This document shows, one piece after another, positions 2,565 to 51,059 of a stretch of 64,000 nucleotides of DNA (position 1 is the stretch's first letter; each line of letters starts with the position of its first letter). The notes beneath the pieces were generated by a model. The model did not search any database, was not told the origin of the DNA, and worked only from the letters and a program-made list of their open reading frames with translations. The stretch spans positions 186,001-250,000 of IMG/VR virus record IMGVR_UViG_3300021520_000002; one strand, 5' to 3'. The position numbers were made by a program, and so were the translations under genes.

Positions 2565-3251
2565 TTATACTCCTTCTTTAACATCACCGTTTGGTAAAAT
2601 AACTTTATCTACTTCTTTTTTAAAAGTGTTAAAATTTTTAAGTTTTTTATAAATTTTTTGTTGTTCTTTTTGTATACTTTTTTTAGTTTCAGGTAAGTAA
2701 TATTTTGCATAACCTTTTTCGCCAAATTTATTTGAAAGATGATCAAAAGATCTTTGAATAAGTTGTTCTCTATCCATATCTAAATAATTATCTTTTCCAT
2801 AAAGATATGATCTTTTAATCATTAATTTTAGAGACGGTGTTTTATCACTATCTTGAATAATCTTTCCAAGTAGTGTTCTTGGAGTGTTAGGATTAGATGC
2901 ACGATGATCTTCACATGCATCGGCAATATCTTTAATTTGTTCTTCAGTAAACCATTTCTTAAGATTTTTGTCCGCTAATACGAATTTAGCAGAATTAATA
3001 TGATGTTCTTCTCTACCTTTTGGAATACCAACATCATGGTATGCTGCCGCCGCGAAAGTCATATTAACATCAACTTTTCTTTTTACAGCTAAATCTAATG
3101 CTGTATTCATAACTAATTTAACATGATCTTGCCGATGACCAGAATCATGTTTATCATACATGGGTATAATTTTTGATTCAATATATTCTTTTAATTCTGG
3201 ATTTACCAATTCTATATTTTCTACTTCAAATAAATAAGATATGCTAATCAT
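2565..3251 (-). CDS. HD-domain phosphohydrolase
   Basis: H..H, AAAYHDVG, EDHRAS, IQDSD motifs. Confidence 0.88.
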   Translation of the reverse strand: MISISYLFEVENIELVNPELKEYIESKIIPMYDKHDSGHRQDHVKLVMNTALDLAVKRKVDVNMTFAAAAYHDVGIPKGREEHHINSAKFVLADKNLKKWFTEEQIKDIADACEDHRASNPNTPRTLLGKIIQDSDKTPSLKLMIKRSYLYGKDNYLDMDREQLIQRSFDHLSNKFGEKGYAKYYLPETKKSIQKEQQKIYKKLKNFNTFKKEVDKVILPNGDVKEGV

Positions 3252-3268: not shown

Positions 3269-3559
3269 TTATTTTCTATTATACCCATATTTATCTCGAA
3301 AAAAATTAAGATTATTTATAGACTTTTTTAAATTTTCAACATCTTGTTTTGGAGATGTTACTTGTTTTGGTATTTTCTGAACTGTTTTTTCTTTTTCATT
3401 ATAAAAATATCCTTTTGCTGGAAATTCTATTCTTTGTAATAAACGTGGTTTTGTTTCATAAGGTTCTTTTTCAAAACGAATTCCATTAAATGCTGGATTC
3501 CATACCCAATCAAGACCAGTGTTAGTTTCAAATTCAAATAAATACCCAATATTAATCAT
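3269..3559 (-). CDS. Hypothetical protein with MIxIxYLFE N-terminus shared with the neighbouring HD protein
   Basis: ORF with SD GGAG; N-terminal similarity to 2565-3251. Confidence 0.65.
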   Translation of the reverse strand: MINIGYLFEFETNTGLDWVWNPAFNGIRFEKEPYETKPRLLQRIEFPAKGYFYNEKEKTVQKIPKQVTSPKQDVENLKKSINNLNFFRDKYGYNRK

Positions 3560-3585
3560 AATTAAACTCCTTAAAATAAAATAAA

Positions 3586-3834
3586 TAAAAAAGTCTTGAG
3601 ACCCCTTTTCGGGATCTCAATATCACGGTCTTTCGACCGGTAGTAAAAGGTGACTAGTTCTTTTACCATCTCTTGAACCCATACATCTGGGTTAGACCGA
3701 TTCTGGAAAGGTTAGTTAAAAGATTAGTCAAATCTTTTTACACCTTTTCTCGTCCAGCAAGAGAGCTAGTTTCGAGACTATGATACAAAGTAATATATCA
3801 CTTAGGATATATTACCTTTCATAGACCTGTCTAT
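3586..3834 (-). ncRNA. Putative structured ncRNA (about 245 nt)
   Basis: Promoter motif at 3842-3851; at least 7 hairpins (e.g. CGGTC-GAAA-GACCG); terminal hairpin TTGAGATCCC/GGGGTCTCAA plus U-tract; no ORF in track. Confidence 0.6.
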
Positions 3835-3861
3835 TATATTAATTTCTATATGAAAAAGAAG

Positions 3862-4010
3862 AAAATAAAATAATGTTACTTTCGTAACATTATTCTTCCT
3901 GTTGGTGGGTTATGACCCCACCGGGTGCGCGATATCACACCTTACTAGTAGTGAGAATGACTCACTACAGATCAAATTTCATAGGCTTATATCGAGCCTC
4001 AAAATGATCA
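3862..4010 (-). ncRNA. Putative structured ncRNA (about 145 nt)
   Basis: Promoter motif at 4021-4030; hairpins GTAGTGAG/CTCACTAC and GGTGGG/CCCACC; terminator AATAATGTTAC-GAAA-GTAACATTATT plus U-tract. Confidence 0.6.
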
Positions 4011-4058
4011 TACTATATTAATTTCTATATCAAATCTTTGAATAACAAAAAGGCGGAG

Positions 4059-4766
4059 TTATCCGCCTGTTAATTGATTTATGATAAGCTGGATTTTCTC
4101 AGGGATAGGAGCATTGAGATCAGGTTCATTAGTTGATCTGTAAATATGTCTTAACTCAATAATTTCGTTAAGGCATATTCCACAACTATGAACATGTTTT
4201 TCAATAACTGTCCTTTCCTCAAGATCAGAGTCGAAGAAGGCATATTTAGCCAACAATTCTGGTTCAATATGTTTCTGATGTTTTTCTTTCATTAACCTAT
4301 TAAACCCAAGTTGGATAAGATGTGGTAACATTTTATCGTTTGGTCCTGCATCCGGAGGAATTTCAGTAAACATCCAATGTTTAGTTGTGATTAAGTCTTT
4401 TTTCCACCATTTCAATTTGTTCTTGTCATATTCATATTTGAATAGATAGAACTTAATTTTGAAAAGATGGTCTAAATCATCAATCTTTTTTACAACATCT
4501 TCCCGATATCCAGTCTGTTTAAAAGCCGCTTTAAGGTTCCATAGGAATGTAAAATTCCATAAGAACGAGAATATTAAATCAGGAACTTCATTGTAATCGT
4601 CTTTATCTATACCATAAATAATTTGATAGTTAACTGTCGATTCAAGATCGGAAAGAGTTTTTTTACACTGGATTATCATATCAATAGCGCGTGAGACCAA
4701 ATGTCTCATATCCACAAATACATATCCACGTTTTTCTAAATCTTTTATTACCAGATTTATTATCAT
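4059..4766 (-). CDS. Protein with C-terminal anti-sigma-like zinc finger (zf-HC2/ZAS)
   Basis: HIEPELLAKY...IEKHVHSCGIC matches H..HxxxCxxC; own promoter motif at 4831. Confidence 0.6.
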   Translation of the reverse strand: MIINLVIKDLEKRGYVFVDMRHLVSRAIDMIIQCKKTLSDLESTVNYQIIYGIDKDDYNEVPDLIFSFLWNFTFLWNLKAAFKQTGYREDVVKKIDDLDHLFKIKFYLFKYEYDKNKLKWWKKDLITTKHWMFTEIPPDAGPNDKMLPHLIQLGFNRLMKEKHQKHIEPELLAKYAFFDSDLEERTVIEKHVHSCGICLNEIIELRHIYRSTNEPDLNAPIPEKIQLIINQLTGG

Positions 4767-4851
4767 ATCTCCTCCTTTAATTTTTAAAATAATATATTAG
4801 AAACTTTATTGTTCCTAATTATACTATATCATTTCTATATGAAAAAGGAGA

Positions 4852-5079
4852 AAACAAAAAGAGAATTTTTTACGTGTCTCTATTCACGGGTTAGAACCAT
4901 TTTTCAGATTTTTATTATCTTAGGTTCACCAAACCTAGGGATTTTTCTCGATTCCCAATCGGACCAATTTGAAGGGTGGTCGTAGACGCTTTATTAAGCA
5001 TCTGGGGCACATAATGTTACTCCCCGTTCCCGTCAGCACTATTTGCGGTTCATATGCTGATCTTTATTAGTCCCTTGTA
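4852..5079 (-). ncRNA. Putative structured ncRNA (about 220 nt)
   Basis: Promoter motif at 5088-5097; GC-enriched serial hairpins (TCAGCA/TGCTGA, AGATGCTT/AAGCGTCT, TAGGTT/AACCTA); U-rich end; no ORF in track. Confidence 0.55.
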
Positions 5080-5113
5080 TTATATTAATTTCTATATGAA
5101 AAACTTGAAAATA

Positions 5114-5389
5114 AAAACCTTTTTAAGGCTGGTTAGGCCTGTTGATCGACTTTTTTAAATATTCGATCAACTGTTTATATGTAGCTGCAAAAGTTGAAGG
5201 ATGATCATATACATCATCCTCTTCATGTCTATATTCTACGATATATTTTTTCGTAGGCATATAAACAATATCTTTTACAGTTATTGAATATACTCCGTGA
5301 TCTCCACGGATGATGATTGGATTATCAATAACTTTTGCTAATCTAATCAATATATCCTCCTTAAAACCTTTTTAAGGCTGGTTAGGCCT
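5114..5389. repeat. 27-bp perfect direct repeat AAAACCTTTTTAAGGCTGGTTAGGCCT at 5114-5140 and 5363-5389
   Basis: Read directly; brackets the 75-aa ORF. Confidence 0.9.
5123..5350 (-). CDS. Hypothetical protein
   Basis: TTG start with SD GGAGG. Confidence 0.65.
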   Translation of the reverse strand: MIRLAKVIDNPIIIRGDHGVYSITVKDIVYMPTKKYIVEYRHEEDDVYDHPSTFAATYKQLIEYLKKSINRPNQP

Positions 5390-5409
5390 AAGACCTCTTT
5401 TTGAGCTGG

Positions 5410-5997
5410 TCAGGCTCCTTCTAAGCCGCGGGAGACTTCTAATACACGAAGATTCCAGATGTCTCTTCTATATCCATACATAAGTGATTCTGCATCTGGT
5501 AATGACCATTCAAGAATTTCCTTTATATTAAAAGGATAACCTGAGAATGGTAATTCACCAAGATAACAATCTCTTGTATGATTATAGTATTGACAATTAT
5601 CTAGAATACATTCAGCACATTCACAATCAGTACATACTATAGAACGGAATTTAACTATTATATAGTTTAATTCCATCTCAAGCATTTTCTGAAAGGATTC
5701 TGTGTTGAAAACGTGATGTGAAGTTCTGAAACAACGTTGATCAACATAACAGTCGCGTTCCCAATACGATTCAGTCAAGTAGTATTTATGTTCCCAACAC
5801 TCTTGACTACAGTCACCCGGTTCATCAGGAATATTTCCCCATTGATCCGAACTGTGATCGTGAATCGCAAGGCAATAATCATTGCACTTGCTTTCACCAT
5901 CTTTACAGTTGTGACAAATCGTATCGTTGATAGCTTCTGATGTTTGAAGAAACGATGAGATGATATCAATAACAATCCTATCAAAGGCTGTTTCCAT
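5410..5997 (-). CDS. Cys-rich hypothetical protein, start revised to METAFD
   Basis: SD GGAGG before ATG at 5997; several CxxC clusters. Confidence 0.7.
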   Translation of the reverse strand: METAFDRIVIDIISSFLQTSEAINDTICHNCKDGESKCNDYCLAIHDHSSDQWGNIPDEPGDCSQECWEHKYYLTESYWERDCYVDQRCFRTSHHVFNTESFQKMLEMELNYIIVKFRSIVCTDCECAECILDNCQYYNHTRDCYLGELPFSGYPFNIKEILEWSLPDAESLMYGYRRDIWNLRVLEVSRGLEGA

Positions 5998-6007
5998 AAT
6001 ATCCTCC

Positions 6008-6181
6008 TTAGTTTGTTTTCTTCTTTCTTTTTCTTCTTCCCCAACAGAGTTTATCATCAGTCCAAGATAAGTTTGTATCCATATCTGATATTCTAATACA
6101 TCCACATGGAAGTTTTTCGAGTTTCCAATTAGGATGATCAAAAGATATTTGAAGCATTCTTTCTTGTAACTCTTTTTCCAT
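6008..6181 (-). CDS. 57-aa basic protein (MEKELQERM...LPCGC...GRRKRKKKTN)
   Basis: Not in ORF track; SD AAGGAG; stop abuts SD of next gene. Confidence 0.65.
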   Translation of the reverse strand: MEKELQERMLQISFDHPNWKLEKLPCGCIRISDMDTNLSWTDDKLCWGRRKRKKKTN

Positions 6182-6332
6182 GTTCTTCTCCTTTATTTTT
6201 ATTTACAGAATAAGAGATATCGATATATAATCGACACCTTATTCCCATGCTTTAACGCGAAAGGTTTTATCGCAACTCAGCTCCGCACGTTTACATGTAC
6301 GCTGAGATTCTAACGGACTACAGTACGGAATG

Positions 6333-6404
6333 TTACTTCCGTGCTGCAGGACATGTTCCAGCATTGCCACAGGCTCCGCATGGAATTCTACACTTGGTAG
6401 TCAT
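6333..6404 (-). CDS. 23-aa Cys-rich peptide MTTKCRIPCGACGNAGTCPAARK, probably leaderless
   Basis: ATG just downstream of promoter motif 6416-6425; similar to C-terminus of 63482-63694. Confidence 0.45.
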   Translation of the reverse strand: MTTKCRIPCGACGNAGTCPAARK

Positions 6405-6570
6405 GTACTATATTAATTTCTATATGATCTTTTTGAATATACAAAAATCTTGCAGATATATAGAAATAATAGCCTATACAAAAATGGGTGGAGAAAGAAC
6501 CCCTTATTAAGTCTTCCATAGGCTGGAATTGTTATTAAGGTGCCTATGTTCTTTCCCCACAAATTAGAAA

Positions 6571-9495: not shown

Positions 9496-10648
9496 CATTT
9501 GTGTTAATCTAAGATCGCGACTCTTAGACTTCTTCTTTTAAAATAAATAAAAGAAGAACCCATAGTTACCTATGGGATCAGACTATATCATCATCCTATT
9601 ATTTTCCTAAAAATTGTTCAAATAATTTAATATTATTCCATTTTTCATTTATTTCATCATTTTTTGATTCATTTTCAGTTTTTGATAATGGTCTAAGATT
9701 TTTTAATGACCAACATTTTTCAAAATTTGAATCTTCAAACGATTTGATATTAAAAGCTATTATTGGAACAATATGATCAATAACCCAATAATTACCATAA
9801 TTATTCCAATTCATTTTATCATCAAACTGTTTTTCAAGATGTTTCATAAGATCAGTAAGATTATATCCAACAAATTTTAACCAACTTTTTCCTTCTTTTT
9901 TACCTTTTAATATTCCCCAAATAGCTCTACTTACAAGTTTTCTTAATCTAAAAGAAGGATCTGTTTTGTATTTATTTTTGATGTATTCTTTTTTCTTTTC
10001 CATTATTTTATCTTTATTATTTTCAAAATATTTTCTATCTTGTTCTCTTTTTTTCTCTGGATGTTCTTTATAATAAGTTTTTTGTTTAGCTAAAAGTTCG
10101 TTTTTATTTTCTTCCCAATGAGCTTTTCGTTCATCCTGATGTTCTAAACAGTAATTTTTATGATATTCAACTCTTTCATCTTTGTGTTTTTCATAATATC
10201 GGTCAGTTTGAGCTTTATGTTTATCAGGATGATTTTTTCGATATTCTTTTACATTCAGATAATCACAAGGTTTACAATAATATTTATATTTTATTGTACC
10301 GTTTTTTGTTTTATATGCTGGAAATTCAATAATATCTTTTTCTTGTCCACATTTACCTCTACAAATTCTTGTTTTCATAATTTTATTATTCCTCCTAGAA
10401 ATTATTAAATGATGATATAGTCTAATTTAATAATTTCTATATAAGAATCTTAATTACTAAATAATAGGATGCCTCGCGCTTCCGTCCGCTTGGACGTACT
10501 CCCTTTCGGGATAGTCGTTACACCTTCAGTTAATATAGTTCGCAGCTATATTAAAAGCTTGGCTCGGTATTGTCCTATTTCTAGGAGTTTCACCGAATTC
10601 ACGAGGTTATTCGAATATCATTACTGATATAAGCCGCTTAATAGATTA
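9496..10648 (-). mobile_element. Group I self-splicing intron (1153 nt) with homing endonuclease in the P8 loop
   Basis: 5' splice U.G pair in P1 (CCGU/GCGG); P10 CUAUU/AAUAG; core elements GAAUUCGGUGAAA, AAUACCGAGCCAAG, GUAACGACUA, GAUAUAGUCU; P8 CAUCCUAUU/AAUAGGAUG; omega-G at 9496; removal restores frame. Confidence 0.9.
9599..10378 (-). CDS. Intron-encoded HNH homing endonuclease
   Basis: N-terminal Cys motifs; WVIDHIVP...NLRPL...NESKND; own SD and promoter motif at 10433. Confidence 0.88.
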   Translation of the reverse strand: MKTRICRGKCGQEKDIIEFPAYKTKNGTIKYKYYCKPCDYLNVKEYRKNHPDKHKAQTDRYYEKHKDERVEYHKNYCLEHQDERKAHWEENKNELLAKQKTYYKEHPEKKREQDRKYFENNKDKIMEKKKEYIKNKYKTDPSFRLRKLVSRAIWGILKGKKEGKSWLKFVGYNLTDLMKHLEKQFDDKMNWNNYGNYWVIDHIVPIIAFNIKSFEDSNFEKCWSLKNLRPLSKTENESKNDEINEKWNNIKLFEQFLGK

Positions 10649-11664
10649 ACGGGATCACGTTTATAGATCACAACTTTTCCATCAACAATTTCTTCTGCTA
10701 CATGAATGAAATATTGTTTAAGTTGTTCTGATACTATATTTGGTTTACTTATTAAACTTGCAAATAATCTCTTAAGATCATTTACATCTGGTGGAACTTC
10801 TGATTTCAGAAATTGTTGGATTATTCCAAGAGCACTACTATCTTTTTTTAAGATATAATTAATTGCAAATGGTTCATATAATTTTAAAACTACTTGCCAA
10901 GGCAATCCAACTGTTCCAAGTTTAAGAGTGTGATCTGTTGTAATAACTAATCTTGCCGAATAATCAGTAGTTTTTCTTAATAATCCACCTCTGATTAATC
11001 CAGATTTTCCTTTCATTCTACTTTTAATCCAGTTATTTGTATCTAATAAAGTATGTTGAATTTGTTCCATAATTGGGACTTTAATATCATCTGGTAATTC
11101 TGGAGCGAAATACTTAATATTTCTTATTAGAGAGCCATAAAATTCTGACAAATCTGAAAAGTTAACAATAGTTTGTCCAGATGTTTTACTAACGGCAAGA
11201 TCTCTAATTCCAGCTGGTAAAAGTATAAATTTATCAATAAAGATTTTATTTTTATTTTCTTTAATAAACTTCACATTTTCTGGTTTATTCTTTTTATATT
11301 TATCTAAATTAATTTTATCAAAAATTGATACTAAATAACCTATACCTGAATTTCCACTTGCATCTTCAATAACTTCTCCTGTTGCTGATAAACTATATTT
11401 CCCTTTATTCTGTAAAAGTTTAGATATGTTTGTATCTAATCCAGATACAATTGAATAAGCTTCAGGATGTATTAATTTTGTTTTCAAATTAACATATGCA
11501 AAAGTTTTTCTACGTTCTGCACTTCCGAATCTTCCAAAAATCTCTTCTGAAAATAATCCATTAGGATCAGTTTTTCCAACTTTTTCATAAAGACGAACAG
11601 TTGTTACTTCTTTTAGTTTGTTTTTTGTTATGAATTCATCAATATCTAATAATTTAAGTTTCAT
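10649..11664 (-). CDS. rpoC: RNA polymerase beta'-like subunit (second RNAP), exon 1; spliced product about 432 aa
   Basis: GLFSEEIFG, LPAGIRD, KGKSGLIRGGLLRKTTDYSARLVI. Confidence 0.88.
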
Positions 11665-11685
11665 AATTAACCTCTCCCAATTTTA

Positions 11686-12330
11686 TTAATTACTAATTTG
11701 ACCTATATAATATTCTTCTAATTTTTTATAAAGTTCAGTATCGATATCATCAACATTCATATCTTTTAAAAGTAACATCATATAATCATTATCTTCTTCA
11801 CCATTCCAATTTTTGATATATGTTCCTTTTTTATATCCATGATTTTGCCGAAATCCATTAAGAATATTTTTGCCGATATACAATTTATACAATTGTTCTA
11901 AAGAGAATATTTCAACTTTATAACACAACATCATGAAATATCTAAGCATAGAAGATTGTTTTAGAGCGGCAAAAGCTAAACTTTCAATACATTCCTGAAC
12001 TGATTGTTTATTATCTTCTTGATCATTTAATACTCTAAAACTATTAATTACAAAATCAAAAACTTGTTTAAGATCTTTATTTTCTTTTAACAAATCACTC
12101 ATTATAAAATGCCAAATATCAACAAGTTCCAGTTGAAGTTGTTCTAAATTAACTTCTCCTTTTTTCCACCATTTCCAATCGGTGTGTTCAATCATTTCAG
12201 CACATTCTGTCCACACAGCACGATACCAAGGAATATCTCTTTCCTTCCAATTTTCACCATTAGTGTGAACACTAAGTTCTTCCTGCTTATCAAACATCTT
12301 TTGTAACATTTCGATTTGTGTCATTATCAT
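11686..12330 (-). CDS. dut: Dimeric (all-alpha) dUTPase
   Basis: ECAEM..WKWWK, ELVDIWHF, KNILNGFRQNHGYKKGTY.K.WNG.EDN. Confidence 0.9.
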   Translation of the reverse strand: MIMTQIEMLQKMFDKQEELSVHTNGENWKERDIPWYRAVWTECAEMIEHTDWKWWKKGEVNLEQLQLELVDIWHFIMSDLLKENKDLKQVFDFVINSFRVLNDQEDNKQSVQECIESLAFAALKQSSMLRYFMMLCYKVEIFSLEQLYKLYIGKNILNGFRQNHGYKKGTYIKNWNGEEDNDYMMLLLKDMNVDDIDTELYKKLEEYYIGQISN

Positions 12331-12472
12331 TTATCTCCTTCATTATTTGATCATGTTCTGCACACCATTCACAATACCAAGATTTTTGACTATTAAATCT
12401 AAAAACTTCTTTTTTAACACCACAACCATAACATTCAATTTCTTTATAAAATAATTTTTTAAAAAATTTCAT
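12290..12472 (-). CDS. Small zinc-binding protein, start revised to MKFFKK
   Basis: SD AGGAG; CYGC...CEWC. Confidence 0.55.
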   Translation of the reverse strand: MKFFKKLFYKEIECYGCGVKKEVFRFNSQKSWYCEWCAEHDQIMKEINDNDTNRNVTKDV

Positions 12473-12487
12473 ATTTTCTCCTAAAAA

Positions 12488-12690
12488 CAAAAAGTTGGGA
12501 CAGAGATCCGGTTTCTCTGTCCCTTTTACTACTATCGTGCTCCTATTTCTATAGGAGCTTTCATTATTTACTGGTAGAGGCGCGCCCACTATCTTTCGCC
12601 AAGTCGACGCGTTGTTTTTGCGTATCTACCAGTATTAGGCGCTCGTGGCTAGCCAGTCCGTTTAACGGGGGCTGCCGATGGCGCGGACAT
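12488..12690 (-). ncRNA. Putative GC-rich structured ncRNA (about 200 nt)
   Basis: Promoter motif at 12698; stems TACTGGTAGA/TCTACCAGTA and GCTCCTAT/ATAGGAGC; terminator GGGACAGAGA/TCTCTGTCCC plus U-tract. Confidence 0.62.
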
Positions 12691-12721
12691 TATATTAATT
12701 TCTATATGAAAAACTTAAAAA

Positions 12722-13056
12722 TAAAAAACCCCCGTAAGGGGGAAGGTCTTTACGACATTAACTGTCGCTCTTATTAGAGTTCCTCAGTCTCCAATAGTTC
12801 CCATAGAGCCCTCTCATCCTATTGCTAGGACTTCTTTCTAATTTTACGAACTTGTCCCTATGGCGATAGTTCAACCAAGTATTTTTCAGACTTCAGAGAT
12901 TTCTCTCAACCCTTCCGGTCGTCTGAATTTCCTTGGAAATTTAAATCGGAGAAAACCGGAGTCGCTAGTCGTTTGACCTCGTCCGATTTTTCTCCTGTAA
13001 TATGAAATATCGACTGAAATCTCCACCGAGGAGATTTCTAACTTCATCTTACTAAA
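12722..13056 (-). ncRNA. Putative structured ncRNA (about 330 nt)
   Basis: Promoter motif at 13063; stems GAAATCTCC/GGAGATTTC, GGAGAAAA/TTTTCTCC, TTCAGAC/GTCTGAA, CCATAGGG/CTCTATGG; terminator CCCCC-TTAC-GGGGG plus U-tract. Confidence 0.6.
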
Positions 13057-13157
13057 AATATTATTTCTATATATAAATAGAGATTATCAAATTAATGTAT
13101 TTTATAATTTAATAGAGCTTCCTCGCCATTCCACGGAAGCTCTTATAAGACTATTGG

Positions 13158-13685
13158 CTAGTTAGTCTGATTTGTTATAATTGGATTTTTTCTTTTATAA
13201 TTTTGATAATATTGTGTAATATCTATTGCAATTCCTGATCTTGTTTTTGTAAGAATTTCTTTACCTAATCTTTCAATATATAAGGTTATATAAGCATCAA
13301 ATTTATATGTTTGATTTTCTTTATCATTTTTTCCAACTAATTTATTTATATTAATATAATTATTAAATTCTTTTAGATCAACACTTAAAATTGCTTTTTC
13401 TTGTTCTCTAAATTCTAATTGTTCTTTATGTTTTTCATGTGGACAAAGTCTTCGACCAAAATCAAGATCACCTGGATATATAATATGTATAAATTTTTTA
13501 ATTTTTTGATCTAATCTAATAATATCTACATAAAAATCAACATATTGATTCATTGGAATACCAAGATTTTCATTCATAAAAATTCGAAAATATCGTGGCT
13601 GATATTCAATTTGAAATTTTGCTTGACTATTAATTAATGCAATAGTTTTTGCTTTAGAACTTCCTTTTGGTATTATTCTTTTCAT
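13158..13685 (-). CDS. Hypothetical protein
   Basis: 175-aa ORF followed by a hairpin at about 13114-13144. Confidence 0.7.
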   Translation of the reverse strand: MKRIIPKGSSKAKTIALINSQAKFQIEYQPRYFRIFMNENLGIPMNQYVDFYVDIIRLDQKIKKFIHIIYPGDLDFGRRLCPHEKHKEQLEFREQEKAILSVDLKEFNNYININKLVGKNDKENQTYKFDAYITLYIERLGKEILTKTRSGIAIDITQYYQNYKRKNPIITNQTN

Positions 13686-14053
13686 TTCTCTCCCTGTTCT
13701 TTAAAGTATCTCACATAACATTTTTCTAACTTCTGAAATCCAAATTTCTGATACAAAACTTCCAACTGTTCATAAGATAAATCTCCATAAGGATTTATAT
13801 CTAATAGAATGTTAGCTTTTATTGAATCTGCCCATTCAATCATTTCTTGTAATAATTTTTTTGCAATTCCTTGTTGACGCAATCTAACTGGAACATTCAA
13901 TCTGTTAAAATAATACCAAGTTTGATTTTTATGTTTAATTCCATGTTCTTTTAAAAGATCATTGTAAATTTGTGTTAAGTCACATACAGCTAAACAATTA
14001 TCACCTTTATGATAAAATGACTTTGATTCTGTTAACATTTTATCCTCCAACAA
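13682..14053 (-). CDS. GNAT-family acetyltransferase
   Basis: LNVPVRLRQQGIAKKLL (motif A), LYQKFGF. Confidence 0.82.
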   Translation of the reverse strand: MLEDKMLTESKSFYHKGDNCLAVCDLTQIYNDLLKEHGIKHKNQTWYYFNRLNVPVRLRQQGIAKKLLQEMIEWADSIKANILLDINPYGDLSYEQLEVLYQKFGFQKLEKCYVRYFKEQGEK

Positions 14054-14393
14054 GTTCTTTTAATTTAAAATTAATATCTTGAATTACACTATCATCAAAT
14101 TTATCTTGATCAATATTATGAATTTCTATTTCTAATTCATCTCTCCAATCTAAATTAAAATCTTGGGAAGTATCTTTTCTATATTTTTCAAGAAATTCTT
14201 TAAAAATTTTAAAAATTTGGTAATCAAGATGATTATATTTTACTAATAAGTCAAATGAATAATCTGGTTCTACTTCATCATAAAATCTTCTTAATTCTGT
14301 TTCTGTTTCAAATCCATAACTAAATATTCCAACAGGTTCATCAAATTCTAATCTTAAAGTTTCAGGATATCTAAAGTCATGATTTGTTATCAT
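14040..14393 (-). CDS. Hypothetical protein
   Basis: ORF in coupled operon. Confidence 0.65.
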   Translation of the reverse strand: MITNHDFRYPETLRLEFDEPVGIFSYGFETETELRRFYDEVEPDYSFDLLVKYNHLDYQIFKIFKEFLEKYRKDTSQDFNLDWRDELEIEIHNIDQDKFDDSVIQDINFKLKELVGG

Positions 14394-14901
14394 TTTCTTT
14401 TCCTTTTAAAATTTTATCTTTAACTAAACTCATTTTTATTTTTTGCATTAAAGCAAGTCTAAAATTTACCACATCGTCAAGATGTTTAAGAGCTTTGCCA
14501 ATATCTTCTTTATTAATAGATTTTTTAACACTTTCTATTGTTTCATCAAGAATATCTCTACAAGTTTCATCAAAAATATTTTTACTATCGTTAAGCGCTT
14601 TTATAAGTTCATTTTTATGAGACTGAAAATCATCATTTATTTCTTTTAAAAATTCTTCTGGATCACATTCAATAGCAGTATTACAACTTGGACAGAAATA
14701 ATCACTTGTAATTTCATCATCTGGTTGATCTGTTAAATATTCTAAATCTCCATCTTTATCAGCTTTAATAACTCCCCATTGTTTTACATCTCTTTCAAAT
14801 TTTAAATAATTTATCTCTTTTTTACAGTGTGGGCATTTAGACATAATGTCCCTCTTCTTCTTTAAGTATAGTATCTGGAGCATCAATAGTAATTGCATCA
14901 A
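14377..14901 (-). CDS. Zinc-ribbon protein, likely start MSKCPHC
   Basis: CPHC...CPSC. Confidence 0.6.
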   Translation of the reverse strand: MMQLLLMLQILYLKKKRDIMSKCPHCKKEINYLKFERDVKQWGVIKADKDGDLEYLTDQPDDEITSDYFCPSCNTAIECDPEEFLKEINDDFQSHKNELIKALNDSKNIFDETCRDILDETIESVKKSINKEDIGKALKHLDDVVNFRLALMQKIKMSLVKDKILKGKENDNKS

Positions 14902-15166
14902 TTTTTTCTCTGAAAATATATGATAATATATATTCAGCGCTATCTATTAATAATGGTTTGTTATAAGATGTTGTATCTCTATGTGTCATAAATTCTCCAA
15001 TTGTAATTGGTTTATGAATATTTAAATTTAATTTTTTTGCAAGTTCTAAAATATTTCGTTTACTTGTTTCAGTTGAACAAATAATTTGTCCATTAACTTT
15101 TGCTGCTCGTTTAACTAATTTTGTTGTTTTTCCTGTTTGTCTAGGTTGATATATTATGTGTGTCAT
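14837..15166 (-). CDS. Small P-loop NTPase-like protein
   Basis: PRQTGKTT Walker A; LLID. Confidence 0.65.
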   Translation of the reverse strand: MTHIIYQPRQTGKTTKLVKRAAKVNGQIICSTETSKRNILELAKKLNLNIHKPITIGEFMTHRDTTSYNKPLLIDSAEYILSYIFREKIDAITIDAPDTILKEEEGHYV

Positions 15167-15475: not shown

Positions 15476-16324
15476 TTATTTCTCCTTTTTAACATCCTCG
15501 AACTCATTTCTATGACTGAAATTATTGAATACAAATACATGCATTCTTGGACTGAATAAATATCCAGTTCTTAAACAATAATCTACTGAATCATAACATG
15601 AATCTCTAAAATCCTGTATGAATGTAAATTCATCAGCATAAGTTAAATAGTCTGGAGTTAAAGGCATAATAGATATTGGTACTTGAGGATTAACATCTTC
15701 AATGAATTTAGTAATATCTTTTTCTGTATCTTTACTGTATACAAATTTATAATTTGCCGATAATGAAAATGGATAAACACTCAATAACTGATTCAATAAT
15801 ACATTTTTAAGTTTAAACATTTCTATAATATATTCAACACCTTTAACTATAATAGATGGATAGTAGTCTGGATTAAGCTTTGGTGAAATATTTAATTGAA
15901 TATTAACTGGTGGAAAATCTATAGCAAAAAATGCATCATCCAACAAAGTTCCATTAGTTTCAATTTCAGCAACTCTAATATCTAAACTTTCACGTAAAGA
16001 AACTAATAATTTCTTCAGAAATATTTTATTTAAAAATGGTTCACCACCAGTAATAAGAACTCTGCTTATATTATATTCTTTAATATGAATTGAACAAGCT
16101 TCCATAAATAATTTCATTTGGTCATCATTATCAATTTTTATCGGCAAAGAATATATAGATTCTATATTTGGAACATCATTTAATTTTAAATTATTGGTCC
16201 ATTTAGTATCACACCATTCACAATTCAAATTACAATTTCCTAATCTAATTAACAAACACGGTTCTCCTGCTGATGGTCCTTCACCTTGGACCGTTGTACA
16301 TAACTGTGTTACTATTCCACTCAT
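15476..16324 (-). CDS. queE: 7-carboxy-7-deazaguanine synthase-like radical SAM protein
   Basis: TVQGEG...IRLGNCNLNCEWCDT, ITGGEP, IETNGT, ISPKL, PRMH. Confidence 0.85.
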   Translation of the reverse strand: MSGIVTQLCTTVQGEGPSAGEPCLLIRLGNCNLNCEWCDTKWTNNLKLNDVPNIESIYSLPIKIDNDDQMKLFMEACSIHIKEYNISRVLITGGEPFLNKIFLKKLLVSLRESLDIRVAEIETNGTLLDDAFFAIDFPPVNIQLNISPKLNPDYYPSIIVKGVEYIIEMFKLKNVLLNQLLSVYPFSLSANYKFVYSKDTEKDITKFIEDVNPQVPISIMPLTPDYLTYADEFTFIQDFRDSCYDSVDYCLRTGYLFSPRMHVFVFNNFSHRNEFEDVKKEK

Positions 16325-21816: not shown

Positions 21817-21988
21817 AGATTTTTATCCACAATTTTAAACCATTTTTCTTTTATTTCTTCTTGAATATCTTCATCAATATTTTCCCATTCATTTCCTAGA
21901 CCTTTACGATCACAAATATCTTCAATAATATCATTTACTATATTTTTTATTGTTTCTTCAGTTACCATTTATTCCTCCTTTGTAAAAA

Positions 21989-22062
21989 TGGGAATGGATG
22001 GAATTGAACCAACAGTCTCTGGATTATCGATCCAGTGCTTCAGCCATTTAAGCTACATTCCC
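21989..22062 (-). tRNA. tRNA-Ile(GAT), no encoded CCA, atypical C33
   Basis: Acceptor GGGAATG/CATTCCC-A; anticodon arm CTGGA-TCGATAA-TCCAG; TTCAA T-loop. Confidence 0.8.
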
Positions 22063-22071
22063 AATGTTTAA

Positions 22072-28928: not shown

Positions 28929-29044
28929 ACCATTTTCTCCATTCTTTTATTTATCTAAAGAGTAACATTTCTATATAAAAATAGAAAATTATCCTTCTAC
29001 TTTATATTATTTCTATATAAACTATTTGAATATAAAAATGGAGC

Positions 29045-36156: not shown

Positions 36157-38127
36157 TTATTCTTTCAGAAATTGTAATTGAACATCTACCACTTCTTTTG
36201 TTCTACTTTTAACGGCGCGATCTTCTGGAAGATGATATTCTCCAGATGTTATGAGTTGTTTTATCAAATCTGGTTTACCTTCTTTCCAATCACTCTTAAC
36301 GGATAAAAATTCTTTAATTGCCTGATCTGTGCCGTTAGTTATCATACTTTCAATTTCCATTTGACCAATTTTAGAACCACCACCCTTTGATCTACCTTTT
36401 AATGGTTGTTGGGTAATAGCTTTAACAGTTCCAAGATCTCTTGCATTCATAATTTTTGAAGCTATTTTATATAATTTTTGAATATACATTGGAGCACAAA
36501 ATATATTCTTTAAAGTAAAATCTTCATTTAATAATCCAATATCTAATTTAAGATTCTGTTTCATATATTTAATAAGTTGTTTCTTTAATAAAACATTTTC
36601 TCTATAAGGTATTGATGTTTTTAATAAATCTTTTATATTTATCTCTGCAAAACATGGGGCTTCAACAAATAAATTAGATTCAGTAACATTATTAATAAAA
36701 TTATGTTTAAATATATCATCAGTTTCAAGATTCTTTATAATATCATTTTCAATTTTATTATAATAATCTTTATCTATATGTCTAATAACTGAATCATTTA
36801 ACCACTTAATTAATTCAGTTGTTTTTTCCGGAGTTTCTCTAATATGTTTATCACAATACATTACAGATTTACCAACAATTCCTTCTAGAATTTGACCTAG
36901 ATTCATTCTTGAGAAAACTGCAAAAGGATTGAAAATTAAATCCAATGGAATGTTTGAATCAACGGCAATAGGTCTTAAATCATCAGGAAGAATTAAACTA
37001 ACTACACCTTTGTTTGCATATCTATTTGCTAATTTATCACCATAATAAGTTGATTCTTGTTTTGAAATTTCTATTTCCATAATATAACAAACTTCATCTA
37101 ATTTGATATTTCCTCTTGAACCTTTCTTTTGAGAAAATCTATAATACTTATCCAATATATGTGTTGCATAATCACCTACTGTTTTTCTAGCAAGATCTTG
37201 CACAACATCTACTATGAATAAAGCATATTTTTTATAAAGACCTTTTATTATATTATGAAGATTAGTATCTATAAGATTTATTTCTCTATCTGGTTTTAAT
37301 CTATGTATTCTTATTCCAGTTACTGTACCATTTTCAACTTTAGATTTTATCTTATTGGTTGAAAATTTAGTACCTTCAAGACTATTTAATGTTAATAAAT
37401 GTGAAATAGACATCGTTTTAAGTGCTTGTTGAACTTTATTTTTGGTTGCCTGAGCATTACCAATATAACTATCTGCTCCTTTAGGTATTAATAAACTACA
37501 AACTGCATCGTCTTTAATTTTTTGGCCGATATTTGGAAAATACGTAAAAGAATTTGGAATATGATCATACATTGTTTTCATTAATGTATATTCATAGATT
37601 GGAATATAAATTTTATCAGTAAATACTGCTTTAGCTTTATCGGCAAAAGATTCAGAAATAACTATTGAATCTTCATGGTTAAAACCAAAAAATAACATAA
37701 ATCCTGTAAATGTATTATAACCATATGAAGGTACACCATTTTTAAAACAATCATATGAAGCTATAATATCTCCTTTCTTAAATTTATCTCCTTCATCCAA
37801 ACTATATCTTAATGTTGTTCCATAAATACTATACACTCTTTTAACTGCTGGAGTATGTATTTCTTCAAGTCTATCTAAATTATCATATTTAACAATTAAT
37901 AAATCATTATTATTGTTTTTATATTTTACTGAACCATCATCTTTAGCAATATTAATTCCTAAAATAGAATTATCTCTAACATGTCTGTAATCAGAACCCA
38001 CAACATATGGAATATCTGTATTAGGACTTGTTAAAGCTTGTTGTACCTGTTTAGATATCATACTTGCTCTTGTTGCGTCTGTTGAAGATAAAAATGGTAT
38101 ACTATTTAGATTAATACTTGTGATCAT
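36157..38127 (-). CDS. rpoB: RNA polymerase beta subunit, C-terminal part
   Basis: IPFLSSTDATRASM, GFNHEDS, GDKLANRYANKGVVS, NPFAVFSRMNLGQ, QQPLKGRSKGGGSKIGQME. Confidence 0.93.
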   Translation of the reverse strand: MITSINLNSIPFLSSTDATRASMISKQVQQALTSPNTDIPYVVGSDYRHVRDNSILGINIAKDDGSVKYKNNNNDLLIVKYDNLDRLEEIHTPAVKRVYSIYGTTLRYSLDEGDKFKKGDIIASYDCFKNGVPSYGYNTFTGFMLFFGFNHEDSIVISESFADKAKAVFTDKIYIPIYEYTLMKTMYDHIPNSFTYFPNIGQKIKDDAVCSLLIPKGADSYIGNAQATKNKVQQALKTMSISHLLTLNSLEGTKFSTNKIKSKVENGTVTGIRIHRLKPDREINLIDTNLHNIIKGLYKKYALFIVDVVQDLARKTVGDYATHILDKYYRFSQKKGSRGNIKLDEVCYIMEIEISKQESTYYGDKLANRYANKGVVSLILPDDLRPIAVDSNIPLDLIFNPFAVFSRMNLGQILEGIVGKSVMYCDKHIRETPEKTTELIKWLNDSVIRHIDKDYYNKIENDIIKNLETDDIFKHNFINNVTESNLFVEAPCFAEINIKDLLKTSIPYRENVLLKKQLIKYMKQNLKLDIGLLNEDFTLKNIFCAPMYIQKLYKIASKIMNARDLGTVKAITQQPLKGRSKGGGSKIGQMEIESMITNGTDQAIKEFLSVKSDWKEGKPDLIKQLITSGEYHLPEDRAVKSRTKEVVDVQLQFLKE

Positions 38128-38206
38128 ATTTTACGCCTCCTCTTATATTTTGAATAAAAAATTTTATTACCATATTATTTCTATATGAATAAGTTAAAAA
38201 TTCAAT

Positions 38207-46053: not shown

Positions 46054-46128
46054 TGGTGCCCAAGGTGAGAATTGAACTCACGACCTAGTGTTTTAGAGGC
46101 ACTCGCTCTACAACTGAGCTACTTAGGC
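46054..46128 (-). tRNA. Amber suppressor tRNA (anticodon CTA) with encoded CCA
   Basis: Acceptor GCCTAAG/CTTGGGC-A-CCA; D arm GCTC/GAGC; anticodon arm AGTGC-CTCTAAA-ACACT; T arm GTGAG-TTCAATT-CTCAC. Confidence 0.85.
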
Positions 46129-49129: not shown

Positions 49130-50695
49130 ATTGTAAAATTGTTAAATGTAATAAAGTTTCTAGTTTTAATTCAGTTTTAGTATTAAATTCTTTACTCTCT
49201 TTAATTTTTCTTACTAGAGCATTATGAGCATTAATATATTCTTCAATTGGTCCAAAATTTGTAATAAAATTTAAAGTTAAAATATCATCATTTTTAAGAT
49301 GTGCATCTTTATAATTTGAATTGCTTATATTTTTCATTATTAATATTTTATTTTCTTCTATTTCAATATAATCTTCTTTTATAATTTCTTTTAAAGAATT
49401 TAACGTTTGTACTTTCACAGTATCTTTTTCTCCTAAAAAAATATTTTATCGGCAAGATTCTATTATTAGATCTTGCCGATATTTATCAAATATATAATTT
49501 CTATATATAAATTGACATTTTATAATTTGACTTTTTTGATTGGTTCACATGTTATAGGATCTAATCTAAAGATAACTACATCTCCATAAATTTTTGCATA
49601 TGCAACTTCCAATTCTCCAATTTTATTTTTTGTAAGATATGGTGGAGCAGAGATAAGACTACTACTTGGACTAAAATTCCAAACGATTACTTTAATCCAA
49701 CCTTCTTTAGCATTAGATTCAACATCTCTATATGAATAATGTTCATTACAAATTGTTTTATAAAAACATGTTATATCACTAGCTTGAATATTAGTATAAT
49801 CTAATAACTCATATTCATCTTTATGTTCTAACATATATTTTTCTGTTTCTTTTAATATTATTTCTCCATTAACTATCATTAGTTTCCTCCTATTTATTAA
49901 TTGTCCTGAATATAACAGAACTTCTATCTTGTAATTCGTTATCTTGGTTGTCTAATAAAATTTTAAAATTCCAATCTAAAACATTTTTATCTTCTTCAAG
50001 AATTTTAATTGTTTCTGTTAATTTTTTTATTAATTCTTTAGTTTCATTTAAATTATCTAATGTGATATAACATTCTTGATATTTGGGGATAAGTTCTATT
50101 CTCATTTCTTTCTTGGACCTATTGCTGAATCAAGTAATTTAATACTTGTTTTTATTGTTTTTTGAGTAAAGAATCCTGCTGGTAAATTTACTCCAATAAC
50201 TTCAATTAGACATATTGGACAAACTTCAACATTAGTTTCTTTTTTTGTTTTTTCATCAATTAATTTAATATGTAAAGCTGTATAATTTTCAACATCAGTG
50301 TATATCATTCCATCAGCAATTATTTTTTGTCTTGTTCTTTCTAATTCAAATCCACCACAGTATGAACAATTATATTTTACTTTTTTTGTTTTTTTCATTC
50401 TTCTTCTCCTTTCACTTCAAAAAACATATTCATTTCAAAAGGTGCTTCACAACCAAGATATAAATATTTACCAAATTCAGACATTATAGACCATAGTTGA
50501 TGTTTTGAATATCCATTTTCATCTGTTTTTGGTAATTTAAATTCAAATGTAGGTTTTCCTCCAGATTGTATAATTAATAATTGTAATTCATCATAATTTT
50601 TTTTTAGAATTTCTTTTCCACGGTCAGTTAATTTTATCAAAACATAATCATTAACATTAAAAGGTATTTTTTTCATTTGATCTCCTAAAATTAAG

Positions 50696-50842
50696 TAGAG
50701 GGTGTACGATACTTTTACTGGCACCCTCTAAACCAGCTCTCAAAGGAGTCCATGATTATGTGGGAGAAAAAGCCACACCCATCACCACCCACATAATCAA
50801 CCACAGTAATCGCTGATGGCATGCACCAAAAATGGTGAGGGG
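50696..50842 (-). other. GC-rich structured intergenic RNA element
   Basis: Stems TGATTATGTGGG/CCCACATAATCA, TAGAGGGTG/CACCCTCTA, CACCA/TGGTG. Confidence 0.45.
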
Positions 50843-51059
50843 TTATATTCTATTTTTTTCCATATCTATTATAAGAGTTGTTAATCTTATTTTTTCTTCA
50901 GTTAAAAATTTTAAATTATTAGTTAAATAATTTTTATTATGATACTCTAATAAAGCAATTGCTTTAAGTACTTCTGCAATTTCTTGTATGCTTTTATATT
51001 CCATTATTCTTCTCCTTTTTATCGGCAAGATCTATTGCTAAATCTTGCCGATATTTATT

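What the first reader, a model, noticed from the sequence alone, without database searches (positions are those of the whole stretch)
12488..13075. Second tandem pair of structured RNA genes (about 330 and 200 nt)
Seen: promoter 13063, a multi-stem unit ending in CCCCC-TTAC-GGGGG-U6, then promoter 12698 and a very GC-rich unit with a 10-bp enclosing stem and terminator. One hairpin of the second unit (GCTCCTATAGAAATAGGAGC) contains the promoter core TATAGAAAT. Inference: large novel ncRNAs; the embedded promoter word hints at a 6S-like RNAP decoy, though it may be just a GNRA-like loop.
Basis: partly seen in the sequence, partly recalled or inferred. Interest (0 to 1): 0.68.

Follow-up and report, generated by a model that had tools for sequence, protein, structure and literature searches.

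The report
Two structured phage non-coding RNA genes
A 286-kb freshwater jumbo phage carries two back-to-back genes, each with its own phage promoter and terminator, that encode folded RNAs rather than proteins; the larger one turns up as a discrete RNA in lake metatranscriptomes, it matches no known RNA family, and what it does is unknown.

Summary
On the minus strand, 13072-12483 holds two promoter-to-terminator units without a credible ORF. E is about 330 nt (about 13052-12723) and F about 200 nt (about 12688-12489). Both fold far better than shuffled sequence (z -4.3 and -5.6) and are 42-50% GC in a 29% GC genome.

The TATAGAAAT "promoter word" is the core of a roughly 35-nt motif. About 60 copies sit 20-60 nt upstream of non-structural genes and one tRNA of this AR9-like phage, and none precede the tail-fibre blocks.

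Unit E alone, not its flanking genes, appears as 294-nt and 257-nt contigs in metatranscriptomes from two independent studies. F was not seen as RNA. It ends in a terminator about 15 nt before the RBS of orf60, which is followed by a dimeric dUTPase and an RNAP beta' fragment.

Sensitive Rfam scans, ARAGORN and BLAST against GenBank phages found nothing. The genome has no RT, TnpB or Ro60. Two more distant relatives lack E/F at the syntenic site. About 90%-identical relatives exist only as short read-run contigs that I could not retrieve, so there is no covariation test.

The 6S-like decoy idea has no support. My best reading is that E is a stable early trans-acting ncRNA and F a terminated leader or attenuator. 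Four similar units lie 6-9 kb away.

The parts
13114..13143 (-). Hairpin AGAGCTTCC-12 nt-GGAAGCTCT just after the stop of the upstream 175-aa gene (13158-13685). It is the probable 3' end or stabiliser of the upstream transcript, so E starts a new unit.
   Evidence: Sequence read directly. It falls in the low z-score zone.
13056..13095 (-). Promoter of unit E. The core ATATAGAAAT is at 13072-13063, with the common GAAATAATAT tail and an upstream TTTGATAAT element.
   Evidence: Member of the genome-wide motif. RNA contigs begin 18-20 nt downstream of its conserved part, at 13040 and 13038.
12723..13052 (-). Unit E, a non-coding RNA of about 330 nt with roughly 12 hairpins or helices, including GAAA and GCAA tetraloops. 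The 5' end is inferred by analogy with AR9 (transcription start about 6 nt past the motif); the 3' end is inferred at the terminator.
   Evidence: MFE -103 kcal/mol, z -4.3. The minus strand is 14 kcal/mol more stable than the plus strand. Helix map. No Rfam or tRNA match.
12747..13040 (-). The stretch of E seen as RNA. A 294-nt metatranscriptome contig with 0 differences (run X12) covers it, and a 257-nt contig covers 12782-13038 with 3 differences (run X15, a different study).
   Evidence: table 8. No near-identical RNA contig lies on the neighbouring genes within 10000-15000. The share of sampled words in the three RNA runs (0.25, 0.17, 0.15) fits E alone.
12723..12742 (-). Intrinsic terminator of E: CCCCC-TTAC-GGGGG plus T6.
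12691..12728 (-). Promoter of unit F. The core ATATAGAAAT is at 12707-12698 and carries the rarer GAAATTAATATA variant. Its T-rich upstream element overlaps E's terminator tail.
   Evidence: Five of the seven genome copies of this variant drive non-coding units.
12489..12688 (-). Unit F, a structured RNA or leader of about 200 nt at 50% GC. It comprises P1 (12684-12639), a central domain closed by a 10-bp stem (12634-12569), hairpin P3, and a terminator.
   Evidence: MFE -77 kcal/mol, z -5.6, low ensemble diversity. Not seen in the RNA runs.
12539..12558 (-). Hairpin GCUCCUAU-AGAA-AUAGGAGC, which contains the promoter word TATAGAAAT.
   Evidence: Chance expectation is about 0.07. It lies inside the segment missing in a relative.
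12483..12523 (-). Intrinsic terminator of F: a 10-bp stem (12523-12497) followed by T5-G-T5. It is immediately followed by the RBS AGGAG (12482-12478).
   Evidence: With the 3' strand withheld, the terminator's GGAC pairs with GUCC at the RNA's 5' end.
12290..12472 (-). orf60, a CxxC...CxxC zinc-ribbon protein. It is the first gene downstream of F and has no promoter motif of its own. It is followed by a dimeric dUTPase-like gene (11686-12330) and an RNAP beta' N-terminal fragment (10621-11664).
   Evidence: GC3 is 0.11, as in real genes. It has no homologues in the 5.8-billion-protein database.

Best explanation
E and F are two autonomous transcription units of an AR9-like jumbo phage that encodes its own multisubunit RNA polymerases. 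Each is driven by the phage's own long AT-rich promoter. This is the promoter class that precedes its non-structural genes, an RNAP subunit gene and a tRNA, and by analogy with AR9 it is read by the injected virion RNAP early in infection. Each unit is closed by an intrinsic terminator, and each produces a folded RNA rather than a protein.

E (about 330 nt) is a stand-alone stable RNA that accumulates in infected cells well above the neighbouring mRNAs. I infer that it acts in trans during host take-over, most likely by binding and titrating a protein, because it is large and multi-helical and sits in a hypervariable accessory region.

F (about 200 nt) is the promoter-proximal leader of the orf60 - dUTPase-like - RNAP beta' operon. 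Transcripts from its promoter either stop at its terminator about 15 nt before the RBS or read through into the operon. On this reading F works mainly in cis as an attenuator that sets, or possibly regulates, expression of that operon.

Shown: promoter-class membership, terminators, absence of coding potential, excess folding, and E present as RNA.
Inferred: early timing, trans action of E, and attenuation by F.
For: Phage identity: 285.6 kb, 29% GC, multisubunit RNAP genes 25-35% identical to those of AR9, PBS1 and Staphylococcus jumbo phages.

Promoter class: there are 65 ATATAGAAAT sites with a conserved context of about 35 nt. They typically lie 20-60 nt upstream of an RBS and start codon, one precedes tRNA-Asn, and one precedes the RNAP beta gene at 38186. 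They are absent from the tail-fibre blocks. AR9 early promoters are likewise extended, AT-rich and highly conserved, with the start 6 nt downstream, and are read by the virion RNAP (PMC5312081).

Terminators.

Structure: z -4.3 and -5.6, confined to the non-coding gap. E shows strand asymmetry in folding energy.

Non-coding status.

Expression: a 294-nt exact contig (13040-12747) and a 257-nt contig (13038-12782) in metatranscriptomes from two studies. No near-identical RNA contig covers the flanking 5 kb, which argues against DNA carry-over.

F as a leader: there is no promoter motif between F's terminator and orf60, and only about 15 nt separate the terminator tail from the RBS. F is absent from RNA contigs while E is present. 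A 5'-GUCC / GGAC alternative pairing competes with the terminator.

Accessory, variable context: two more distant relatives (64% beta' identity; 51% dUTPase identity with conserved gene order) lack E/F at this site. orf175 and orf60 have no homologues. Four further promoter-driven non-coding units lie at 3.5-6.4 kb.
Against: - No covariation test was possible. More than 20 contigs of the same phage species are 100% identical across the region, and the contigs of about 90%-identical relatives could not be retrieved.
- The RNA evidence comes from assembled contigs, which cannot give true 5' and 3' ends, strand or abundance.
- F was not seen as RNA at all.
- The transcription start, the timing, and the polymerase that reads this promoter are inferred from AR9, whose promoter sequence differs.
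- No binding partner or target was found. The adjacent proteins gave no RNA-binding signal.
- The alternative pairing in F is only 4 bp.
- Absence from two relatives also fits dispensable sequence.
Confidence: 0.55

Rival explanations
1. F, and possibly unit D, is a ligand-sensing riboswitch of a new class. The 160-nt fold would bind a nucleotide-related metabolite and decide between the terminator and read-through into a nucleotide-metabolism and RNAP operon.
For: The layout is the classic promoter - structured domain - terminator - RBS. The fold is well defined, with low ensemble diversity. The 5'-end GUCC can pair with the GGAC of the terminator's 5' half, giving a P1-versus-terminator switch. 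The downstream genes include a dimeric dUTPase / NTP-pyrophosphatase. Unit D has the same layout upstream of an HD-domain phosphohydrolase.
Against: No known riboswitch class matches. The switch helix is only 4 bp. No homologues are available to show a conserved binding core. A relative lacks the whole central domain while keeping P1 and the terminator. Riboswitches that act on a phage-encoded non-canonical RNAP are unknown.
Confidence: 0.1
2. One reading: a 6S-like RNA that mimics a promoter and sequesters an RNA polymerase, phage or host, through the TATAGAAAT hairpin.
For: The hairpin at 12558-12539 contains the promoter core word. A phage with its own RNAPs could afford to block the host enzyme.
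Against: There is no 6S family hit. The fold is not a rod with a central bubble. Only 10 of about 35 promoter positions match, and the 9-mer core is expected by chance about 0.07 times in the region. The domain carrying the hairpin is deleted in a relative. F is not detectably accumulated, whereas 6S-type decoys are stable and abundant.
Confidence: 0.04
3. There is no RNA-level function. On this view the units are transcribed spacers or insulators, or decayed remnants of mobile DNA such as a degenerate intron or homing cassette, that happen to lie between strong promoters and terminators in a fast-changing region.
For: The region is hypervariable and E/F are absent at the syntenic site of two relatives. 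One relative carries a 115-nt deletion in F. The phage does carry mobile introns nearby. Tandem promoters are common in this genome.
Against: GC content is 13-21 points above the genome's, and folding is far above shuffles, which is hard to maintain without selection in a 29% GC phage. Each unit has its own complete promoter and terminator. There are six such units. E accumulates as a discrete RNA. The deletion breakpoints fall exactly on predicted helix boundaries, as expected for a modular RNA. There is no intron signal, although the same scan mode found the real intron.
Confidence: 0.15
4. The units encode small proteins, for example the 53-codon frame at 13047-12886 in E, translated from a near-leaderless mRNA.
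For: An ATG lies about 5 nt past the inferred start, and 38-53-codon frames exist.
Against: GC3 is 43-54% against 5-20% in the phage's genes. There is no RBS. Both RNA contigs start downstream of that ATG. Gene callers called a gene inside E/F on only one of the roughly ten public contigs examined: a 39-codon fragment on the opposite strand at a contig end.
Confidence: 0.03

Closest known systems
Abundant phage-encoded non-coding RNAs of unknown role, such as the T4 species 1/2 RNAs and the early small RNAs reported for some Pseudomonas phages (from memory), and the four ncRNAs reported for jumbo phage PA5oct (abstract of PMC7318152)
   Same: They are phage-borne, have their own promoter and terminator, have no ORF, are highly expressed during infection, and have no known function.
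   Different: There is no sequence or family relationship. E is much larger (about 330 nt) and multi-helical. The promoter here is of the class that, in AR9, is read by a virion multisubunit RNAP. Six such units are clustered.
6S RNA (Rfam RF00013 and relatives)
   Same: Similar size range for F (about 200 nt), and the idea of an RNA that engages a polymerase.
   Different: No covariance-model match, no rod-and-bubble architecture, and no accumulation seen for F.
Transcription-terminating riboswitches and leaders, and phage cis-acting leader RNAs such as HK022 put (from memory)
   Same: F sits between a promoter and the first gene and ends in a terminator next to the RBS. A 5'-end/terminator alternative pairing exists.
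   Different: No known aptamer class matches, conservation is untested, and E is not in a leader position at all.
Environmental high-abundance structured RNAs found through metatranscriptomes (IMES-1 to -4) and large phage-associated RNAs (GOLLD, ROOL); all are in Rfam, the comparison is from memory
   Same: A structured RNA that stands out in environmental RNA data and, like GOLLD and ROOL, is carried by phages. Its GC-rich intergenic signature is the one used to find such RNAs.
   Different: No match to any of these models. E is smaller than GOLLD or ROOL. E is known from one phage species only, so it is not yet a family.
Group I introns of AR9-like phages
   Same: GC-rich structured RNA islands in the same genome; one true intron splits the RNAP beta' gene 2 kb away.
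   Different: E and F give no intron hit in the scan mode that scored the true intron at 57 bits. They interrupt no gene, and they have their own promoters and terminators.

Membership tests
6S RNA | Match to the family covariance models | tested here: not met
   Sensitive cmscan of 12000-13600, both strands, E-value up to 10: no 6S-type hit.
6S RNA | Extended rod with a closing stem, a large central bubble and a terminal stem | tested here: not met
   The MFE and centroid folds of F and E are multi-branched, and the ends are not joined by a long stem. This rests on prediction only.
6S RNA | Binds RNAP holoenzyme and templates product RNA | not testable with these tools
   Needs biochemistry.
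Riboswitch / attenuating leader (unit F) | Lies in the 5' leader between a promoter and the regulated gene, with a terminator as the expression platform | tested here: met
   Promoter core 12707-12698, terminator 12523-12483, RBS 12482-12478, ATG 12472.
Riboswitch / attenuating leader (unit F) | Mutually exclusive terminator and antiterminator pairing linked to the sensor domain | tested here: inconclusive
   Only a 4-bp GUCC/GGAC alternative was found.
Riboswitch / attenuating leader (unit F) | Conserved aptamer core with covariation across many genomes, or a match to a known class | tested here: not met
   No Rfam class matches. No homologues could be retrieved. A relative lacks the central domain.
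Group I intron | Match to RF00028 and interruption of a gene | tested here: not met
   No hit in 12000-13600, while the same mode scored a true intron at 10391-10658 with 57 bits. The flanking ORFs are complete genes with their own stop and RBS.
tRNA / tmRNA / tRNA-like | Cloverleaf or tmRNA architecture | tested here: not met
   ARAGORN at default and relaxed thresholds found nothing credible.
Retron msr-msd, TnpB/IscB guide RNA, Y RNA | Partner protein (RT, TnpB/IscB, Ro60) encoded alongside | tested here: not met
   No PF00078, PF07282 or PF05731 match anywhere in the 285.6-kb genome; the control genomes were positive.
Independent phage non-coding RNA gene (generic kind) | Own promoter of the phage's class, own terminator, no coding potential, transcript detected | tested here: met
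   All four criteria are met for E. For F the first three are met, and the transcript was not detected.

The most novel reading that the evidence does not exclude
E is the founding member of a new class of large (about 330 nt), intricately folded phage RNA that is among the most abundant transcripts of an uncultured jumbo phage in nature. It would act as a ribozyme or as the RNA core of a host-takeover or anti-defence ribonucleoprotein. With F and units A-D it would form an RNA arsenal cassette in the early region of AR9-like phages.
Probability: 0.12. Interest if true: 0.8.

Novelty: new member of a known kind. Interest (0 to 1): 0.5.

Why it matters
Structured bacterial and phage RNAs longer than 200 nt are rare, and they have repeatedly turned out to be ribozymes or RNP scaffolds. 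Here an uncultured jumbo phage with its own RNA polymerases devotes at least six strong promoters to non-coding, GC-rich, highly folded transcripts. One of them is directly visible in lake metatranscriptomes while the flanking genes are not.

This gives a concrete, expressed candidate for RNA-based host take-over or anti-defence in jumbo phages, where non-coding RNAs have barely been explored. It also shows that the phage's promoter motif can be used to enumerate such genes.

The value is limited by the lack of relatives. At present this is one phage species, with no covariation and no function.

Tried and rejected
RNA family and homology searches
- Rfam at the gathering threshold over the whole window returned only two tRNAs. 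It also missed a true group I intron, so I did not rely on it.
- Sensitive Rfam mode on 12000-13600 and on 3400-6500 gave only chance-level hits.
- BLASTN (distant mode) of 12400-13200 against 50,697 GenBank phages gave no match.
- BLAST within the own genome found only the promoter repeats, no paralogues.
- Units A-F share no significant k-mers or duplexes with one another.
- A covariance model of E or F was not built. E is too long for the tool's time limit, and a single-sequence model would add little.

Searches for relatives
- A promoter 21-mer scan of IMG/VR returned 11 unrelated phages of 17-78 kb with one chance site each.
- Protein-anchored searches in IMG/VR: orf175 gave nothing. The dUTPase gave only unrelated phages at 34-42% identity. 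The beta' fragment gave one true relative, G012, which uses the same promoter but has no E/F in its 51 kb. The beta' C-terminal subunit gave nothing.
- The JGI metagenome scan with orf175 found only the source contig.
- The 5.8-billion-protein search returned only orf175 and orf60 themselves. The dUTPase has relatives at 85% and 66% identity on contigs under 1 kb that stop short of F, and a 51% relative whose syntenic site lacks E/F.
- More than 20 public contigs of the same phage species are 100% identical, so they carry no variation.
- I considered fetching relatives' contigs through spurious ORFs translated from E or F. I did not do it: the odds were low and the cost high.

Other checks
- Relaxed ARAGORN gave only noise.
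- RT, TnpB and Ro60 are absent from the genome.
- An ESM Atlas look-up of orf175 had low confidence and gave no lead.
- Literature searches found no description of such RNAs.

Full report
CONTEXT. The window is bases 186001-250000 of a single 285,572-bp virus record (CheckV completeness 95%) with 29% GC. Sequencing runs that hold the stretch are lake and freshwater metagenomes from several studies. The phage encodes split multisubunit RNA polymerase subunits. The beta' N-terminal fragment (10621-11664) is 25-35% identical to those of Bacillus phages AR9, PBS1 and BpSp and of Staphylococcus jumbo phages, and further beta and beta' pieces lie at 36157-38127, 51060-53048 and 54184-55374. Nearly all genes in this part of the genome are on the minus strand.

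THE OBSERVATION. On the minus strand, the 685-nt gap between a 175-aa ORF (13158-13685) and a 60-aa zinc-ribbon ORF (12290-12472) contains, in order:
- a hairpin after the upstream stop codon (13143-13114);
- a promoter motif with core ATATAGAAAT at 13072-13063;
- about 330 nt of GC-rich sequence ending in CCCCC-TTAC-GGGGG-T6 (12742-12723);
- a second promoter motif (core 12707-12698);
- about 200 nt at 50% GC ending in a 10-bp terminator stem and a T-run (12523-12483);
- the RBS AGGAG, and the ATG at 12472.

The terminator scan finds 6 sites here against 0.5 expected. The hairpin GCUCCUAU-AGAA-AUAGGAGC (12558-12539) and the 10-bp stem (12634-12625 pairing with 12578-12569) are both present in the MFE fold.

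THE PROMOTER WORD IS A REAL PHAGE PROMOTER CLASS. TATAGAAAT occurs 84 times in the genome, 64 of them on the minus strand. Sixty-five sites share ATATAGAAAT within the consensus atTTTnATaTTtaannnTTTcATATAGAAATAATA. These sites typically lie 20-60 nt upstream of an RBS and start codon. One precedes tRNA-Asn and one precedes the RNAP beta gene. The tail-fibre blocks at 28-46 kb and 270-285 kb have none. A relative with 64% beta' identity uses the same motif.

The motif does not fit sigma-70 spacing. [quoted passage not shown] Early timing and the identity of the polymerase are inferred by that analogy and were not shown here.

NON-CODING AND STRUCTURED. No ORF exceeds 53 aa under table 11. With TAG read through, a check made only because a tRNA(CTA) lies at 46054-46128, the only longer frame is a 99-codon one on the opposite strand. 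The frames inside E have GC3 of 43-54%, against 5-20% in the phage's genes.

E folds at -103 kcal/mol (z -4.3, 0 of 100 shuffles as good). F folds at -77 kcal/mol (z -5.6, 0 of 200). A sliding 150-nt scan puts z below -2 only between about 13250 and 12400, while the coding flanks stay near 0. E's minus strand is 14 kcal/mol more stable than its complement. F shows no such asymmetry.

EXPRESSION. Three metatranscriptome runs hold 15-25% of the sampled words of 12300-13300. Two of them, from different studies, were laid on 10000-15000. In each, the only near-identical contig is inside E: 294 nt covering 13040-12747 with no differences, and 257 nt covering 13038-12782 with three. Apart from a conserved intron core at about 10467-10528, which many organisms share, nothing else in the 5 kb is represented. 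DNA carry-over is therefore unlikely, and E must be far more abundant or stable than the neighbouring mRNAs.

The contig ends sit 12-14 nt inside the inferred start and 5 nt before the terminator stem. That fits the unit, but contigs cannot define true RNA ends. F was not seen as RNA.

WHAT IT IS NOT.
- The sensitive Rfam mode gave only chance-level hits on 12000-13600. The same mode found a true group I intron at 10391-10658 (57 bits), which the whole-window scan had missed.
- There is no tRNA, tmRNA or tRNA-like fold.
- The own genome has no paralogue, and GenBank phages give no match.
- No reverse transcriptase, TnpB-type nuclease or Ro60 is encoded anywhere in the genome. This removes retron, guide-RNA and Y-RNA models.

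RELATIVES. More than 20 public contigs of the same phage species (JGI, ENA, Logan, NCBI) are identical across the region. orf175 and orf60 have no homologues among 5.8 billion proteins. Two more distant relatives lack E/F. G012 has fully coding sequence upstream of its beta' gene. L059/L060 keeps the order QueE-like gene ... 109-aa gene ... dUTPase ... beta', with only an 88-nt gap where our phage has about 2.9 kb that includes E and F. E and F therefore sit in a variable accessory insert.

A DNA run (X16) holds relatives about 90% identical across 12215-13168, but only as 330-450-nt contigs that I could not fetch. One of them replaces 12524-12638 with 7 nt. These breakpoints coincide exactly with the 3' end of F's first domain and the first base of its terminator. 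That is what a modular RNA would show. It also removes the domain carrying the promoter-word hairpin. This is one contig at low depth and should be treated with caution.

A LARGER PATTERN. Four more promoter-driven, ORF-free, GC-rich, strongly folding units lie at 6425 to about 6185 (A), 5097 to about 4862 (B), 4030 to about 3868 (C) and 3851 to about 3580 (D). C and D form another tandem pair, and D, like F, ends in a terminator just before an RBS. Five of the seven genome copies of the promoter variant GAAATTAATATA drive these units. The six RNAs share no detectable sequence similarity.

INTERPRETATION. E is best read as a stand-alone, stable, early, trans-acting non-coding RNA. F is best read as a terminated leader, that is an attenuator, of the orf60 - dUTPase-like - beta' operon. 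That operon has no promoter motif of its own, so it must be reached by read-through. A 4-bp pairing between the 5' end and the terminator hints at a switch but is weak.

The 6S-like decoy idea fails every test I could make: family match, architecture, significance of the word (about 0.07 expected by chance), persistence in a relative, and accumulation. What E binds or does remains unknown. Protein titration during host take-over or counter-defence is my inference from its size, its fold and its hypervariable early context.

VERDICT. This is a real pair of phage non-coding RNA units, one with direct expression evidence, and neither belongs to a described family. It is known from a single phage species, with no evolutionary support for the fold and no function. 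Interest is moderate.

Noticed in passing
window 10391-10658 (-) and 9559-9643 (-), with ORF 9599-10378 (-): A group I intron (RF00028, 57 bits, E 2e-13) follows the RNAP beta' N-terminal fragment. It carries its own phage promoter (core at 10442) and an endonuclease VII/HNH-like ORF. The whole-window gathering-threshold scan missed it. Its core (about 10467-10528) is shared at 80-90% identity by many contigs in the laid runs.
   Followed up: partly
window 3580-6425 (-): Four further promoter-driven, ORF-free, GC-rich structured units: A 6425 to about 6185, B 5097 to about 4862, C 4030 to about 3868, D 3851 to about 3580. C and D form a tandem pair, and D ends in a terminator before an RBS. 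None has an Rfam match. Five of the seven GAAATTAATATA promoter variants in the genome drive such units.
   Followed up: partly
window 46054-46128 (-) and 21988-22063 (-): A suppressor-type tRNA with anticodon CTA (ARAGORN calls it tRNA-Pyl) and a tRNA-Ile(GAT). The genome has nine tRNAs in all. This may mean that TAG is read through in some genes; I did not test that.
   Followed up: no
genome-wide, e.g. L062 6420-6500, 8810-8890 and 10540-10610; relative L060 about 5900-5960: The palindrome ...CGGCAAGATCT-loop-AGATCTTGCCGAT... occurs about 37 times in the genome. It sits between genes and just upstream of promoters, and it is conserved in a distant relative. It is a probable clade-specific terminator or RNA-end hairpin.
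   Followed up: partly
window 12524-12638 in run X16: A contig from a relative replaces F's central and P3 domains (115 nt) with 7 nt. The breakpoints fall exactly on predicted helix boundaries.
   Followed up: partly
window 50670-50864 (-); genome 116.55-116.82 kb (-), 114.16-114.35 kb (-), 89.1-89.3 kb (+): More GC-rich structured non-coding stretches, several directly upstream of an RBS. By eye, the one at 89.1 kb carries the same intron-core sequence as the beta' intron.
   Followed up: no
window 6425 (-) / 6458 (+): A back-to-back divergent pair of the phage promoter motif. Close tandem promoters also occur at 29018/28976 and 58446/58413.
   Followed up: no
window 11686-12330 (-), 15476-16324 (-), 2565-3251 (-): Nucleotide- and DNA-modification-related genes near the RNA units: a dimeric dUTPase/MazG-like gene, a QueE-like radical SAM gene (suggesting 7-deazaguanine chemistry), and an HD-domain phosphohydrolase.
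   Followed up: no
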